Assembly: GCA_977020255.1 (NCBI GenBank)
Contig: CDROCS010000253.1
Location: 4,092,001 to 4,156,000, forward strand
Length of the DNA: 64,000 nt
DNA from: Obrimoposthia wandeli
Taxonomy: Eukaryota
Direction of reading: 5' to 3'
Shown: positions 10,789 through 15,514 of the stretch, piece after piece
Layout of the letters: each line of letters begins with the position of its first letter
Numbering within the stretch: position 1 is the stretch's first letter
The notes under the pieces: generated by a model
Told to the model about the DNA's origin: nothing
Databases searched by the model: none
Seen by the model: the letters and a program-made list of their open reading frames with translations, nothing else
Position numbers and translations under genes: made by a program

Positions 10789-11460
10789 ATGTTGATATTG
10801 TTAGTTGAAGATGAATCTGATCTTGCCGAATTGACTATTGATTTTCTTGAAACGCTTAACATGGAATGTGACTATGCATTTGATGGTGCCAATGCGCTGA
10901 CTTTAATAAATAAAAATCATTATGATGTTATTGTACTTGATGTAAACATGCCAAGACTGGACGGTTTTAGCGTATGTGAAAGAGTTCGTGCACAGGGTAA
11001 TTCAACCCCTATTATTTTTCTAACTGCGCACGATAGCTTGGCTGACAAGCTTAACGGCTTCTCTCTAGGTGCTGATGATTATTTAACTAAACCTTTTGAG
11101 TTAGAAGAGTTAGCGGTAAGAATTCAACTGCTCGCTAACCGCAAAACTAAAATATCGATAACAGAACTGTTTTCTTTAAATTCATTATCAATAGATTATC
11201 AAAAACGCCGTGTTAGTCGTTCTGACCGTTTAATTGCACTCTCCCCTACTCAATGGCAATTACTGGTGTTACTTGCAAAGCATAGTCCCAATGTTGTTGA
11301 TCGTATGACCATAGAAAATGAAATATGGCCTGACCAAACACCCAGTAAAGACATGCTAAAAACGTTAATATTTAGATTAAGGAATTTAGTAGATAGTACC
11401 CATGAAGCTAAGTTAGTTCATACCATTCGTGGTGCGGGGATATCGTTAAAAGAAGACTAA
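10789..11460 (+). CDS. OmpR-family response regulator
   Basis: LLVEDE, VLDVNMP, DDYLTKPF receiver motifs plus winged-helix C-terminus (HTIRGAG). Confidence 0.95.
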   Translation: MLILLVEDESDLAELTIDFLETLNMECDYAFDGANALTLINKNHYDVIVLDVNMPRLDGFSVCERVRAQGNSTPIIFLTAHDSLADKLNGFSLGADDYLTKPFELEELAVRIQLLANRKTKISITELFSLNSLSIDYQKRRVSRSDRLIALSPTQWQLLVLLAKHSPNVVDRMTIENEIWPDQTPSKDMLKTLIFRLRNLVDSTHEAKLVHTIRGAGISLKED

Positions 11461-11500
11461 AACAATACAATGTACATAAGTAAATTAGTGAGTAAAACAC

Positions 11501-12880
11501 ATGATTAGCCAGTCCAAAAATTCATTGCATCAATTTTTAAATCAGCGCTATTTAGCAATATTAATTTTATTAATCATGCTGTTTAGTGTCGTTATTTTAT
11601 TTATGCGTTATAGCGCTATGGATGATACGACAGATTACTATATGCAGTATGACGCGCAAGTGCTGAGTGAGTATTATCAAGTAACGGATGATATTGTTGA
11701 ATTTGATGCTGGACGTAAAGAGTTTTATTGGGGTGTAAGCCGCTTACCTAAACGTTATCAATTATTATTGGAGCTTAATGATGACCACACTAGCCTAGTA
11801 CTCAATGAGACAAGAATATATCAACTGGCTGATAAAATTGTTTATCTTTTGCCTTACGATTCGGTTGAAAAAAAAGAAGTCTTCTTTGTTTTGCACTTGT
11901 TTGATGTAGAAAGTGAGGCCATGTTCTATCAGTCTTGGCAGAACGTTTTTATCTTGTTAGTTGCCTTACTTTTATTATTCGTTATTTTTTATAGTTTACA
12001 TACTAATAGACAAATAACCCGACAAATGGCAGATTTTTCTGTTTGGGTTCAAGCAATGAGTCACCTTGACTACGCTGAACTACAACGACAAAAAACACCT
12101 GAATCGATAAGCTTTAAAGAGCTAATTAACACGGCTAATTCCTTACAAGCTAGTTTATTAACTCAATATGATTTACAACATAAAGAACAAGTATTGTTAA
12201 CACGAGAAAAACATTTTCTTAGCTGCTTAAGTCATGAATTAAGAACGCCGATGGCAATTATTGCGGCGGCACTGACACTGTTGAATAAAAGTGATGCAAT
12301 AACAACTAAAGATAGAAGTAAGCTGGTAAAGCTGAACAAGGCTCATCTGAATATGAAACAGTTGACTAATACCTTACTACAACTTTGGCGCGGACAGCAA
12401 GATTCATCTCAAAGCAACATACAGAGTGAGCTACAAAATAAACTACAACATAAGATATTTCTATTAGATGAATTAGTCGAAAATTCAGTGTCGGCTTGTC
12501 AGCAACATTTTTCTAAAAGAAGCATTTCCTTCGCGGTAAATATGCAGGGTAATACAAGGTTATTCAGTCATTTAGAACTAGCAGATATTTTAATCAGTAA
12601 CTTATTACGAAATGCTTGCCAATACAGTGTCGATGGTAAGATAAATGTTGATATAAATAGCCATTGTTTATTTATTGAAAATGACATTTTAGAGGTGAAT
12701 GCAGCTGGGAACATAACGACAAAACTTGATGAGTCGGATATTACCTACGGTTATGGTATAGGACTCTTTTTGGCTGAAGCAATTTGCCAGCAACAGAACT
12801 GGCAGTTAAAAATCACATCAAAAGCACAACTATTTACAGTACAAGTGATATTTCATGATGTACAAAAAAATCAAGCCTAG
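11501..12880 (+). CDS. Sensor histidine kinase
   Basis: Two TM segments, H-box SHELRTPM, N-box NLLRNA, G-box GYGIGL. Confidence 0.93.
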   Translation: MISQSKNSLHQFLNQRYLAILILLIMLFSVVILFMRYSAMDDTTDYYMQYDAQVLSEYYQVTDDIVEFDAGRKEFYWGVSRLPKRYQLLLELNDDHTSLVLNETRIYQLADKIVYLLPYDSVEKKEVFFVLHLFDVESEAMFYQSWQNVFILLVALLLLFVIFYSLHTNRQITRQMADFSVWVQAMSHLDYAELQRQKTPESISFKELINTANSLQASLLTQYDLQHKEQVLLTREKHFLSCLSHELRTPMAIIAAALTLLNKSDAITTKDRSKLVKLNKAHLNMKQLTNTLLQLWRGQQDSSQSNIQSELQNKLQHKIFLLDELVENSVSACQQHFSKRSISFAVNMQGNTRLFSHLELADILISNLLRNACQYSVDGKINVDINSHCLFIENDILEVNAAGNITTKLDESDITYGYGIGLFLAEAICQQQNWQLKITSKAQLFTVQVIFHDVQKNQA

Positions 12881-12983
12881 GTTAAAGATATTAGTCTGAA
12901 TATATTATCTTTAGCCTAGGCTTGTGGATGAGTAATCGAAGGAGCAAAACTTGGTTCACTCTCTCATTAAGTAAGTCAGTCAT

Positions 12984-13787
12984 TTACTGTTGAATAAATT
13001 CTTGTTTTATTAATATGCCATCATCTAACCACATAAGCAGATAGTTTAAGGCAACTTGGCTTGCTTCATCTTCATTCACTTCTTCGAGTAAAAAATCACA
13101 TAAAGCGGTAAAGCTTGCGCCATTTAAAATCATAGTAATAAGATTGTATTCTTGTGCTGGCAAGGAACGAAATTGCGTTAAACGATCATTATTTCGCCAA
13201 AGCAACCAGTTGCTGTGCTGTGCTTTTGCTGGCTCAGGTGATTGCTCTTGTTTTAGGGCTTGCCAAGTTTCCACACTATTGTAATGAAAATGCGCCAGTT
13301 GCACACTTGGGTGAAAACGAAAAACTAAATCAGGCCACTGTTCAGGCGGGGTATTTGCGAGCAAATCACGGGTAAATCGGGTTGCGTCAGCCGCATCAAA
13401 AGCCACCATAAGTAAGCGTTCAAAATGAGCTAATTCGCTAATAATAGGGTGATCTTTAAAGGGTGCGTTATTGGCCAAAAACAAAGGTAATTTATCAGCG
13501 AAATATCTAAGCGAGGTATTATCAGAAGGGTAAGCGTTAATATAACCTAACACCATTTGGTCAAATAAATCATCACCAAGGAAAAATCCTAACATTTCAT
13601 GGTCGTTTTCAATGGTTTCTTTGAGTCTTACTTGGTAAGCGTTTTTGTATATATGCAGGCGAACATCACGGGTAATGTTGCCATGGTCCTTAATCTGATC
13701 CCTTATTTTAGTGGTAACAGCGGGATCGTCATCCACTAAGTAATTAATTAATTTTTGCTGTAATGAAGCTAACGGTAATTTATCCAC
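12984..13787 (-). CDS. DUF2063-type MNIO partner protein (BufC/HvfC-like)
   Basis: RLHIYKNAYQVRL and ELAHFERLL, C-terminal LLWR...QFR; directly downstream of the DUF692 gene. Confidence 0.85.
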   Translation of the reverse strand: MDKLPLASLQQKLINYLVDDDPAVTTKIRDQIKDHGNITRDVRLHIYKNAYQVRLKETIENDHEMLGFFLGDDLFDQMVLGYINAYPSDNTSLRYFADKLPLFLANNAPFKDHPIISELAHFERLLMVAFDAADATRFTRDLLANTPPEQWPDLVFRFHPSVQLAHFHYNSVETWQALKQEQSPEPAKAQHSNWLLWRNNDRLTQFRSLPAQEYNLITMILNGASFTALCDFLLEEVNEDEASQVALNYLLMWLDDGILIKQEFIQQ

Positions 13788-14720
13788 TTACGTTATTTTC
13801 TCCTGTTGCTGTAATTGCTCCAGTTGCCCTAACGTGGCGTAAGCAATATTTCGTGCCGTTTCAACTTCTGTTAATAACTCAGCCAAAGGGGGAATGTTAT
13901 CATCGCGTTCAATCATGGTACTTACCCAGCCAAACCTTTCCAGTGCTTGTTTATATAGAGCCCAAACAGGATCAGCAACCGGATGGTCATGGGTATCGAT
14001 AACATAATTTCCGTAATCGGTATGCCCTGCTAAATGAAATTGTTTCACCTTGTCTTTGTCGATACCTTCAAGATAATCTTGCGGCTTAAAGTCATGATTT
14101 CGTGCACTGACATAAATATTATTAATATCTAATAATATGTTACAACCAGAACGACGAGCAACTTGATTAAAAAATTCCCACTCACTCATTTCTGATTCTT
14201 TATAAGTGATGTAGCTTGATAAGTTTTCTAAAAGAATAGGACGCCCTAAAAAGTTTTGTACTTGATCTACACGGTCACAAACATGATTCAGTGCTTCTTC
14301 GTTATAAGGTAAAGGCAGTAGATCATGGCTATTAGTTTGATTAACGCCAGTCCAACACAGGTGATCAGATATCCATTGTGGCTGTAACTCATTTACTAGG
14401 ACTTTTAACTTTCGTAAATACTGCATATTTAACGGATCAGTTGAGCCTATAGACAAGGATACCCCGTGCATTACCATAGGGTAAAGCTCACGAATTGCGT
14501 GTAAATAGTGTTTGGGCTTGCCACCGTCAACCATAAAATTTTCAGAAACAACTTCAAACCAGTCAATATCAGGTTTAGTTGATAACACATCTTGAAAATG
14601 ATCTGTTCTTAGCCCTAGACCAAAGCCGAGGAAGTCATCCGGTGGAGCGATACTATCAACAGCGCTAGAGAGTGAAAACTCTCTAGCGCTAGCTTGATTT
14701 TTTATCAAGTTATGAACCAA
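13788..14720 (-). CDS. DUF692 multinuclear non-heme iron oxidative enzyme (MNIO; BufB/HvfB-like)
   Basis: GLGLR, WFEVVSENF, MHGVSLSIG, SDHLCW, LLENLSSY, LLDINNIYV, FHLAGH, IDTHD, MIERD. Confidence 0.95.
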   Translation of the reverse strand: MVHNLIKNQASAREFSLSSAVDSIAPPDDFLGFGLGLRTDHFQDVLSTKPDIDWFEVVSENFMVDGGKPKHYLHAIRELYPMVMHGVSLSIGSTDPLNMQYLRKLKVLVNELQPQWISDHLCWTGVNQTNSHDLLPLPYNEEALNHVCDRVDQVQNFLGRPILLENLSSYITYKESEMSEWEFFNQVARRSGCNILLDINNIYVSARNHDFKPQDYLEGIDKDKVKQFHLAGHTDYGNYVIDTHDHPVADPVWALYKQALERFGWVSTMIERDDNIPPLAELLTEVETARNIAYATLGQLEQLQQQEKIT

Positions 14721-15195
14721 CAGTGCCGCCTACATCATCACAAGTATTTGCTGGTAATGCGACAAAACCATGGCCTTTACAAACGGCTTGACCTTTACAG
14801 GCATTTTCAGCTGTTTTACAGTCATTATGACCACTACATTTGTTTACGCCGTAACAATGCGTTAATTCAGCTGTGTTAACGACACCACGCCAATCATCTT
14901 GTACCTTTCCGCCAATGTCATCACACGTTTTAGTCGACATAGCAACAAAACCATGTCCCTTACATACTGCTTGACCTTTACAGGCATTTTCAGCCGTTTT
15001 ACAGTCGTTATGACCATTACATTTATTTACGCCGTAACAATGCGCCATTTCAACGGTATTGGTTGCGCTAGTTTTAGCTGTTTTAGTACTTGAGTCGCCT
15101 GCAACTGCAGTACATCCCATTAAGCCTGCAACCGCTAATGCTACTGCGGTACCTTGAAGCTTTGTTTTAGTGCTCTGATTCATTGTATTCTCCAT
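14710..15195 (-). CDS. Cys-rich exported RiPP precursor with two tandem bufferin (BufA2-like) domains; probable start at 15183
   Basis: Signal-like N-terminus, then HCYGVNKCxGHNDCKTAENACKGQAVCKGHGFV...TCDD twice with a 61-aa (183-bp) period. GGAGA RBS precedes the ATG at 15183. Confidence 0.88.
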   Translation of the reverse strand: MENTMNQSTKTKLQGTAVALAVAGLMGCTAVAGDSSTKTAKTSATNTVEMAHCYGVNKCNGHNDCKTAENACKGQAVCKGHGFVAMSTKTCDDIGGKVQDDWRGVVNTAELTHCYGVNKCSGHNDCKTAENACKGQAVCKGHGFVALPANTCDDVGGTVGS

Positions 15196-15514
15196 TATTT
15201 TTAGACATTTATTTTTTATAGATCAGGCCACATTTTGCTTTAAGCTAAGTTACATAAATTACCTATGAATCATGTTCAGTTTAAATAAAAATATTGCCTA
15301 CAGCACCTTTAACCTTAGTTCAAGATCATCATTTTCTTAAAATAATTATGACCAATTATAAAAGTTACCACCTAATTTGACCTGCTAATCTATTTATAAC
15401 TTTCATTTTTATTTGAATAATAAATTTATATTTTTATGAAATTTTAGAGCCCGTTTACCGTTCGGTACGTAAAAGTAACAGCGTAATAAAGAGAGTCTTT
15501 TGTGCAACAATAAA

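What the first reader, a model, noticed from the sequence alone, without database searches (positions are those of the whole stretch)
12984..15195. MNIO RiPP cluster with a tandem double-domain, 12-Cys bufferin-like precursor
Seen: precursor, DUF692 and DUF2063 genes are tightly coupled (11-bp overlap, then abutting). After the signal region the precursor has two near-identical 61-aa domains (183-bp period; 14764-14860 vs 14947-15044). Each has six Cys in the pattern CYGVNKC-x5-C-x6-C-x5-C-x12-C plus conserved His, and the DNA differences are mostly silent. Known: DUF692 enzymes (MbnB, ChrH, BufB, HvfB) oxidatively modify Cys of precursor peptides; bufferins and oxazolins are exported metal-binding products with thiooxazole-type heterocycles. 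Inference: a two-module metal-buffering peptide with roughly doubled capacity, possibly cleaved in the QDDWRGVV linker. The LMGC motif may make it a membrane-anchored lipoprotein rather than a soluble periplasmic peptide. I do not know of a characterised tandem, lipid-anchored member.
Basis: partly seen in the sequence, partly recalled or inferred. Interest (0 to 1): 0.7.

Follow-up and report, generated by a model that had tools for sequence, protein, structure and literature searches.

The report
Tandem lipoprotein bufferin-2 copper-peptide operon
This is an ordinary three-gene bufferin-2 operon of a marine Colwellia, in which an iron enzyme turns cysteines of an exported peptide into copper-binding rings; its doubled, lipid-anchored precursor is real, but that form is already in print and common in marine bacteria.

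Summary
Window 12984-15195 (minus strand) carries bufA2-bufB-bufC. The precursor matches NCBIfam BufA2 twice (140.7 bits, cut-off 60), BufB scores 396.6 (cut-off 310), and BufC has DUF2063. The two 55-aa domains are 78% identical with dN/dS about 0.06. Synonymous divergence is near saturation, so the duplication is old and both copies are under selection.

One correction: the true start is ATG 15183 (157 aa), not 15195.

The novelty claim does not hold. Leprevost et al. named the family BUF_6/12Cys. Their 2025 survey reports 12 Cys in about 10% of Buf2 and lipoprotein signals in about 16%. It also models a 12-Cys protein from Cognaticolwellia aestuarii, about 81% identical to this one. I found the same 12-Cys plus lipobox form in at least 67 of 80 species loci. 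No tandem member has been characterised biochemically.

The proposed cleavage in the linker is unsupported. D96, W98 and G100 are at least 90% conserved and the linker is modelled as a confident beta strand.

Small additions:
- 0 of 25 single-domain BufA2 in an even sample carry a lipobox.
- A stem-loop after bufA is conserved in structure, not sequence, in 73 of 81 loci.
- In two metatranscriptomes a contig over bufA ends 5 nt past that stem-loop.

Verdict: already known, low interest.

The parts
15184..15385 (-). 5' leader and promoter region of bufA2 (extent inferred)
   Evidence: Metatranscriptome contigs reach 15381 (X9) and 15291 (X20). TATAAA hexamers sit at 15398-15393 and 15220-15215. 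The motif at 15236-15215 is conserved in all five Colwellia. No Rfam family matches and the leader is not unusually structured (z -0.2).
14710..15183 (-). bufA2: 157-aa tandem 12-Cys bufferin-2 precursor
   Evidence: NF050166 scores 140.9 bits against a cut-off of 60, in two stretches. The start codon is fixed by comparison with relatives.
15112..15183 (-). Signal peptide with lipobox L-M-G-C (Cys24)
   Evidence: Fits the lipobox pattern. Cys24 and G23 are at least 90% conserved in the 30-sequence alignment A1. G11, A17 and A19 reach at least 90% and A15 is invariant in both A1 and the 110-sequence A3. About 98 of 120 protein homologues and at least 67 of 80 species loci carry a lipobox.
14899..15063 (-). 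Bufferin domain 1 (residues 41-95, six Cys)
   Evidence: First BufA2 HMM stretch. Groups with domain 1 of other species in the domain tree.
14881..14898 (-). Conserved inter-domain linker (DDWRG)
   Evidence: D96, W98 and G100 are at least 90% conserved. Predicted beta strand 93-103 at pLDDT about 90.
14716..14880 (-). Bufferin domain 2 (residues 102-156, six Cys)
   Evidence: Second BufA2 HMM stretch. pS 0.56 and pN 0.06 against domain 1.
14661..14690 (-). Perfect stem-loop (14 predicted pairs) just after the bufA stop, inside the 5' end of bufB
   Evidence: Region MFE -39.2 kcal/mol, z -3.95. A stable hairpin sits at this junction in 73 of 81 loci with unrelated sequences. An RNA-library contig ends at 14656.
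13788..14720 (-). bufB: MNIO bufferin maturase (310 aa if it starts at TTG 14720)
   Evidence: NF050167 396.6 bits (cut-off 310) and PF05114 382 bits. E 2.4e-44 to PDB 3BWW. The ERD-D274-N Asp is the marker of the Cys-Lys MNIO class (PMC13097082).
12984..13787 (-). bufC: DUF2063 partner protein with an RRE-like C-terminal domain
   Evidence: PF09836 53.6 bits (cut-off 27.2). NGO1945_C 22.1 bits (below its cut-off of 27). HvfC model 52 bits (below its cut-off).
12862..12924 (-). Intrinsic terminator closing the operon (long hairpin plus a T7 run), shared with the convergent kinase gene
   Evidence: Sequence. The fold gives -33.7 kcal/mol for 12860-12990.

Best explanation
This is a bufA2-bufB-bufC (bufferin 2) operon on a 4.68-Mb Colwellia chromosome.

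Shown here:
- All three proteins are family members.
- The precursor is an old, selectively maintained tandem of two six-Cys bufferin domains. They sit behind a lipoprotein-type signal peptide and a disordered S/T/A tether.

Inferred by homology to Caulobacter Buf2:
- In the cytoplasm the BufB-BufC complex oxidises the four central Cys of each domain to 5-thiooxazoles.
- After Sec export the first and last Cys of each domain form a disulfide. That gives 8 heterocycles and 2 disulfides, a predicted shift of about -36 Da.

Inferred from the lipobox:
- Lgt, LspA and Lnt acylate Cys24. Because residue +2 is Thr, Lol probably carries the product to the inner face of the outer membrane.
- There the product would act as a tethered, roughly double-capacity sink for copper or another thiophilic metal.

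Inferred from structure conservation and from where RNA contigs lie:
- A stem-loop just after bufA gives an abundant bufA-only transcript and sparse read-through into bufBC. This would set a high substrate-to-enzyme ratio.
For: - Family scores are above curated cut-offs for BufA2 (two stretches) and BufB, and DUF2063 is present in BufC.
- BufB carries Asp274 in ERD-D-N. PMC13097082 ties this position to Cys-Lys substrates, and each domain here has three C-K motifs.
- The gene order bufA-B-C is kept in 76-79 of 80 species loci.
- Domains 1 and 2 give pS 0.56 and pN 0.06. Domain labels need 8 changes on the tree against 53 when shuffled.
- The lipobox is conserved. UniRef names several orthologues 'Lipoprotein'.
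- In the AF2 model residues 1-39 are disordered and the linker is ordered.
- Chemistry and copper role of Caulobacter Buf2: CysI-CysVI disulfide, four central Cys at -4 Da each, copper induction (PMC11626156).
- Lipidation of an MNIO RiPP through the SPII pathway has been shown for DybA (PMC13056109).
- The hairpin gives z <= -2 in 73 of 81 loci, with median energy -18.4 against -8.85 kcal/mol for control stretches inside bufB.
- In two metatranscriptome runs, a contig over 14656-15381 is separate from the bufBC contig 13054-14569. The contig depth figures are 296.6 against 18.3.
- In X20 the figures are 131-169 against 11.7 and 3.1, and the two DNA-like runs (X1, X3) show no step at the bufA-bufB junction.
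Against: - Nothing here tests modification, lipidation, location or metal binding.
- No copper gene or known copper regulator is linked. The neighbouring two-component system is adjacent only in one other Colwellia, and its regulator scores below the heavy-metal subfamily cut-off.
- An A-V-A site at residues 26-28 could also serve signal peptidase I. About 15% of tandem orthologues lack the Cys.
- The hairpin has no U-tract in Colwellia, so termination as opposed to processing is open.
- The read-laying tool states that contig depth is a poor measure of expression. The RNA contigs come from a relative that is 91-94% identical, and no silent control stretch could be laid.
Confidence: 0.8

Rival explanations
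1. The precursor is cut by signal peptidase I (for example after A-V-A at residues 26-28) and acts as a soluble periplasmic tandem bufferin. On this view the Cys24 lipobox is unused.
For: About 15-20% of tandem orthologues have no Cys in the signal peptide and end in typical AxA sites. NCBIfam names the family 'periplasmic'. All 25 single-domain BufA2 sampled have type I signal peptides.
Against: Cys24 and G23 are at least 90% conserved in the 30-sequence alignment A1. The sequence fits the lipobox pattern. A disordered S/T/A tether typical of lipoproteins follows it. Lipoprotein-signal bufferins are predicted independently in two papers.
Confidence: 0.15
2. The tandem protein is a polyprotein that is cleaved in the DDWRG linker into two single-domain bufferins.
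For: Multi-core RiPP precursors are cleaved into units in other families (general knowledge). The linker contains an Arg.
Against: The linker is among the best-conserved and most confidently modelled parts, as a beta strand at pLDDT about 90. No protease gene is conserved beside bufABC in 80 loci. Bufferins are known to act as small folded proteins without core cleavage (PMC11626156).
Confidence: 0.05
3. The system handles something other than copper, such as another soft metal (Hg, Ag, Cd, Zn) or redox stress.
For: No copper gene is linked here. MerC-Buf2 fusions suggest that some bufferins serve mercury (PMC12452194). Sigma and anti-sigma copper regulators are not found in Buf2 clusters.
Against: The only tested Buf2 is copper-induced and protects against copper. 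All characterised 5-thiooxazole peptides bind copper.
Confidence: 0.2

Closest known systems
Bufferin 2 of Caulobacter vibrioides (bufA2B2C2; PMC11626156)
   Same: Same three-gene order without doxX. Same precursor family (six-Cys domain with C-K motifs), the same BufB subfamily, and a DUF2063 partner. The precursor is exported by Sec.
   Different: The Caulobacter precursor has one domain and a type I signal peptide and is SigF-regulated. Here there are two domains, a lipobox, and no linked sigma or anti-sigma genes.
12-Cys Buf2 of Cognaticolwellia aestuarii (WP_077285100), modelled in PMC12452194
   Same: It is an orthologue: locus L015, 81-82% identical. It has the same tandem 12-Cys architecture, the same LMGC lipobox and the same bufABC core.
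   Different: That locus has an HvfX/DoxX-family gene directly upstream. The window's operon has none, and the only HvfX gene on this chromosome lies about 630 kb away. Neither protein has been characterised experimentally.
Lipo-DybA and chryseobasin-type lipidated MNIO RiPPs (PMC13056109)
   Same: An MNIO-modified peptide that carries a lipobox and is triacylated through Lgt, LspA and Lnt. That paper also lists bufferins among the predicted RiPP-lipoproteins.
   Different: It uses a ChrH-type MNIO with macrocycle and hydantoin chemistry, occurs in Bacteroidota and Neisseria, and is not a thiooxazole metallophore.
Oxazolin (HvfA), fontiphorin and bulbicupramide: the EGKCG-repeat captophorins
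   Same: A BufB-like MNIO with a DUF2063 partner installs many 5-thiooxazoles on one exported, copper-binding protein.
   Different: These are Lys-Cys 5-mer repeats in an extended or helical protein, not folded six-Cys domains. Their MNIO has Phe where this BufB has Asp274.

Membership tests
BufA2 / Buf2 (BUF_6/12Cys) bufferin precursor | Match to the curated family model above its cut-off | tested here: met
   NF050166 scores 140.7-140.9 bits against a cut-off of 60, in two stretches. All 110 aligned homologues also match.
BufA2 / Buf2 (BUF_6/12Cys) bufferin precursor | Six (or twelve) conserved Cys in the family spacing | tested here: met
   Twelve mature Cys, all invariant in 110 homologues.
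BufA2 / Buf2 (BUF_6/12Cys) bufferin precursor | N-terminal Sec-type signal peptide instead of a classical leader | tested here: met
   Lys-rich n-region, Ala/Leu-rich h-region and a lipobox. No SignalP tool was available.
BufA2 / Buf2 (BUF_6/12Cys) bufferin precursor | Gene order precursor-MNIO-DUF2063 | tested here: met
   The order is conserved in 76-79 of 80 loci.
BufA2 / Buf2 (BUF_6/12Cys) bufferin precursor | Central Cys converted to 5-thiooxazoles; copper binding | not testable with these tools
   Needs mass spectrometry, UV spectra and metal titration.
BufB (MNIO bufferin maturase) | Equivalog model above its cut-off, and the MNIO fold family | tested here: met
   NF050167 396.6 bits (cut-off 310) and PF05114 382 bits. 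PDB 3BWW at E 2.4e-44, sharing the HG, DH, EN, D-x-NN, H-x-AGH, DTH and ERD motifs.
BufB (MNIO bufferin maturase) | Asp at the substrate-Lys-contacting position of Cys-Lys-class MNIOs | tested here: met
   ERD-D274-N in the window. The same Asp occurs in 55 of the 63 loci where the motif was found. The criterion comes from PMC13097082.
BufC (PME type 1 partner) | N-terminal DUF2063 plus a C-terminal RRE-like domain | tested here: inconclusive
   DUF2063 is met (53.6 bits, cut-off 27.2). The C-terminal NGO1945_C domain scores 22.1 bits, below its cut-off of 27. The HvfC model scores 52 bits, below its cut-off of 142. No sequence hit in the PDB.
Bacterial lipoprotein (SPII substrate) | Lipobox [LVI]-x-[GAS]-C at the end of the h-region, with a positively charged n-region | tested here: met
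   VALAVAGLMGC fits the PROSITE-type pattern, with K6 and K8 in the n-region. The lipobox is conserved in most orthologues.
Bacterial lipoprotein (SPII substrate) | Acylated N-terminal Cys and membrane association | not testable with these tools
   Needs globomycin treatment, mass spectrometry and cell fractionation.
Four-gene bufABCD cluster | A DoxX/HvfX gene in the operon | tested here: not met
   No DoxX/HvfX gene lies next to the operon. A stand-alone HvfX-family gene lies at C253:3474141-3474740. This is not disqualifying, because Caulobacter buf2 also lacks it.

The most novel reading that the evidence does not exclude
Tandem 12-Cys Buf2 may be a distinct, ancient subclass of mainly marine Gammaproteobacteria. 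Domain doubling is almost always coupled to lipid anchoring: 0 of 25 single-domain against about 85% of tandem precursors carry a lipobox. The product would be an outer-membrane-tethered, high-capacity metal sink. Its precursor mRNA would be kept roughly ten-fold above the maturase mRNA by a structure-conserved stem-loop after bufA. Neither the coupling nor the stem-loop is mentioned in the papers I read.
Probability: 0.45. Interest if true: 0.35.

Novelty: already known. Interest (0 to 1): 0.2.

Why it matters
Bufferins are among the largest RiPP families and a widespread bacterial answer to copper stress. The tandem, lipid-anchored form is common in marine Gammaproteobacteria (Colwellia, Pseudoalteromonas, Shewanella, Endozoicomonas and others) but has never been studied at the bench. 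A Colwellia or Pseudoalteromonas member would be a sensible model for three questions:
- How does one signal peptide guide BufBC over eight Cys in two domains?
- Does lipidation place the metallophore at the outer membrane?
- How is the precursor-to-enzyme ratio set?

As a genome-scan finding it adds nothing categorically new. NCBI's annotation pipeline already has a model that names this gene.

Tried and rejected
- The Pfam scan of the precursor gave nothing. Only NCBIfam has a BufA2 model.
- PDB searches by sequence profile and by Foldseek found no relative of the precursor. BufC had no PDB sequence hit.
- Recent duplication or gene conversion cannot explain the near-identical domains. pS is 0.56 (dS about 1), and domain 1 clusters with domain 1 of other species.
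- The adjacent two-component system is probably not the dedicated regulator. It is adjacent only in C. psychrerythraea ND2E, and its regulator scores below the heavy-metal subfamily cut-off.
- No sigma-70 consensus promoter was found upstream of bufA by the simple scan. No inverted-repeat operator is convincing. There is no Rfam family and no unusual structure in the leader.
- My first fixed-window hairpin finder missed many stems. I replaced it with a sliding-window test against shuffles and an in-gene control.
- The upstream ATG at 15195 is rejected as the start.
Full report
**What is there**

Window 12984-15195 holds three co-directional ORFs on the minus strand.
- The first ORF matches NCBIfam NF050166, the BufA2 family periplasmic bufferin-type metallophore. 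It scores 140.7 bits against a cut-off of 60, in two separate stretches.
- The second matches NF050167 (MNIO family bufferin maturase, 396.6 bits, cut-off 310) and Pfam PF05114.
- The third carries DUF2063 (53.6 bits, cut-off 27.2) and a sub-threshold NGO1945_C domain.

This is a bufA2-bufB-bufC operon. A long hairpin followed by seven T at 12862-12924 closes it opposite a convergent histidine-kinase gene.

**Checking the observation**

The repeat is real.
- The best self-match has a period of 183 nt.
- 14764-14860 versus 14947-15043 is identical at 89 of 97 nt.
- The two 55-residue units share 43 of 55 residues.
- Each unit has the stated C-x5-C-x5-C-x6-C-x5-C-x12-C pattern.

By Nei-Gojobori counting, domain 1 against domain 2 gives pS 0.56 and pN 0.06, so dS is about 1.0 and dN/dS about 0.06. 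It also means the duplication is old and both copies are under strong purifying selection, not recently copied.

A tree of 160 domains from 80 proteins separates the domain-1 and domain-2 labels with 8 changes, against about 53 for shuffled labels. A single origin is not excluded.

One correction concerns the start codon. In four Colwellia relatives the sequence before the start carries an extra G, which throws the ATG at 15195 out of frame. The ATG at 15183, with GGAG 6 nt upstream, is invariant. The precursor is therefore 157 aa, as in its nearest database homologues.

The bufB start is less certain. TTG 14720 gives the 11-nt overlap and is the only in-frame start codon shared by all five Colwellia copies. 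The four substitutions upstream of the hairpin between the window and L007 are synonymous in that frame.

**Host**

The window lies on a 4,677,312-bp contig (C253) of a 1.35-Gb, 6,912-contig assembly. The precursor is 95-96% identical to those of Colwellia psychrerythraea and C. demingiae. The contig is therefore essentially a Colwellia chromosome inside a much larger mixed assembly.

**How common is the architecture**

- A protein search returned 1,523 hits. Of the best 120, 114 have exactly twelve mature Cys and about 98 have a lipobox.
- In one-genome-per-species contigs, 375 stretches encode a relative. Of the best 80 loci, 76 have twelve Cys. Of those, 67 match my lipobox pattern and two more have L-F-[GS]-C.
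- The hosts are mostly marine Gammaproteobacteria: Colwellia, Cognaticolwellia, Thalassomonas, Psychrobium, Shewanella, Pseudoalteromonas, Paraglaciecola, Amphritea, Endozoicomonas, Kangiellaceae and Marinicella.
- In an even sample of 401 Pseudomonadota genomes, 22 have BufA2 above the cut-off. Only 2 are tandem, and both have a lipobox. The 25 single-domain precursors from the other 20 genomes all have type I signal peptides.

Tandem architecture and lipobox thus go together strongly. The tandem forms are related to one another, so these are not independent events.

**What is already published**

- Leprevost et al. 2024 (PMC11626156) named the family BUF_6/12Cys for its six or twelve conserved Cys.
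  - For Caulobacter Buf2 they showed that CysI and CysVI stay unmodified and probably form a disulfide.
  - The four central Cys each lose 4 Da, and the product absorbs near 305 nm.
  - The operon is copper-induced and lacks doxX.
- The 2025 survey (PMC12452194) states that 10% of Buf2 have 12 Cys as duplicated domains and that about 16% have lipoprotein signal peptides.
  - Its modelled 12-Cys example is WP_077285100 of Cognaticolwellia aestuarii.
  - That species is my locus L015, 81-82% identical to the window's protein.
- PMC13056109 shows experimentally that an MNIO RiPP (DybA) is triacylated through the lipoprotein pathway. It lists bufferins among predicted RiPP-lipoproteins.
- PMC13097082 defines the Cys-Lys class of these MNIOs by an Asp in place of FonB Phe250. 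The window's BufB has that Asp (ERD-D274-N), and PDB 3BWW has Phe there.

I found no paper that characterises a tandem member at the bench.

**Mechanism**

Shown: family membership, architecture, and conservation.

Inferred by homology:
- BufBC converts the four central Cys of each domain to 5-thiooxazoles.
- The outer Cys pair of each domain forms a disulfide after export.
- The predicted total is 8 heterocycles and 2 disulfides, about -36 Da.

Inferred from sequence:
- The signal peptide ends in L-M-G-C and fits the lipobox pattern.
- The residue after Cys24 is Thr, not Asp. By the E. coli rule the product would go to the outer membrane.
- The next 16 or so residues are S/T/A-rich, and AlphaFold gives pLDDT below 50 for residues 1-39, as for a flexible tether.
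- The h-region is unusually conserved for a signal peptide: A15 is invariant and G11, A17 and A19 reach at least 90%. This fits the published suggestion that the signal peptide is part of what BufBC recognises.

The linker is not a loose spacer. D96, W98 and G100 are at least 90% conserved, and residues 93-103 are modelled as a beta strand at pLDDT about 90. No protease accompanies the operon in 80 loci. I therefore rate cleavage between the domains as unlikely.

**An addition: the bufA-bufB stem-loop**

A perfect stem-loop (14 predicted pairs) lies at 14661-14690, just after the bufA stop. The surrounding region folds at -39.2 kcal/mol with z -3.95. Across 81 loci the sequence at this junction is unrelated between genera, yet the structure recurs.
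- 73 loci have a local fold with z <= -2 against shuffles.
- The median energy is -18.4 kcal/mol, against -8.85 for same-length stretches inside bufB.
- 76 of 81 junctions reach -12 kcal/mol, against 19 of 78 controls.
- In several genera the stem is followed by a T-run and so looks like a true intrinsic terminator. In Colwellia it is not, and it lies within the first codons of bufB.

Two marine metatranscriptome runs hold contigs of a 91-94% identical relative.
- One contig spans 14656-15381. It covers the leader and bufA and ends 5 nt past the stem.
- A separate contig spans 13054-14569 and covers bufB and bufC.
- Their depth figures are 296.6 and 18.3. In the second run the figures are 131-169 against 11.7 and 3.1.
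- The two DNA-like runs (X1, X3) show no step at the bufA-bufB junction.

The tool warns that contig depth is a poor measure of expression. It also warns that DNA can be present in RNA libraries, and I could not lay a silent control stretch. I therefore treat this as suggestive only. It fits the familiar RiPP design of an abundant precursor transcript with limited read-through into the enzyme genes. None of the search terms for it (terminator, hairpin, stem-loop, attenuation, stoichiometry) occurs in the 2025 bufferin survey.

**Regulation is unresolved**

- No consensus promoter was found.
- A 22-nt motif at 15236-15215, ending in TATAAA, is conserved in all five Colwellia. That includes one relative whose upstream region is otherwise replaced.
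- RNA-library contigs extend further upstream, to 15291 and 15381, where another TATAAA sits at 15398-15393.
- The neighbouring OmpR-type two-component system is linked only in one other strain. Its regulator's best match, the heavy-metal regulator subfamily, is below the cut-off.

**Verdict**

However, the tandem 12-Cys form and the lipoprotein signal are both already described for this family, with the published example from the sister genus. NCBI's own model would also name this gene. The finding is already known and of low interest. The tandem-lipobox coupling and the conserved stem-loop are modest additions.

Noticed in passing
G000:C253:1712312-1714378 (L109 2113-4179, + strand): A second bufferin operon lies on the same Colwellia chromosome. 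It encodes a 95-aa, four-Cys precursor with a type I signal peptide, which looks like Buf1/DUF2282. A BufB (364 bits to NF050167) and a 259-aa BufC-like gene follow it. The organism therefore has two systems, as Caulobacter does.
   Followed up: partly
G000:C253:3474141-3474740 (L110 1603-2331, - strand): A stand-alone HvfX/DoxX-family gene (206 bits to NF050144) lies about 630 kb from the buf2 operon and is not next to any MNIO gene.
   Followed up: partly
G000:C2815:26636-29881 (L002): A second tandem lipoprotein bufA2 (160 aa) sits on another contig, from a Cognaticolwellia-like bacterium, with an HvfX-family gene directly upstream. Its bufB looks broken: the ORF stops after 189 aa, HMM positions 145-205 are missing, and there is one TAG.
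   Followed up: partly
whole assembly G000: The assembly has 1.35 Gb in 6,912 contigs, with at least 18 BufB-like genes on many different contigs. It is a mixed assembly (a metagenome, or a host plus its microbiome). C253 is a near-complete 4.68-Mb Colwellia chromosome within it.
   Followed up: no
window 15215-15236 (- strand): A 22-nt motif ending in TATAAA is conserved in all five Colwellia upstream regions. That includes L009, where the rest of the upstream sequence is replaced. It could be a proximal promoter or an operator. RNA-library contigs nevertheless start further upstream.
   Followed up: partly
window 10789-12880 (+ strand): An OmpR-type response regulator and a histidine kinase converge on the buf operon. 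The regulator's best NCBIfam hit is the heavy-metal subfamily (172 bits, cut-off 279). This adjacency is seen only in C. psychrerythraea ND2E among 80 loci.
   Followed up: partly
loci L098, L102, L103 (genomes G227, G299, G326): Some Pseudomonadota carry two adjacent single-domain bufA2 genes instead of one two-domain gene. This is a different route to two bufferin modules per operon.
   Followed up: no
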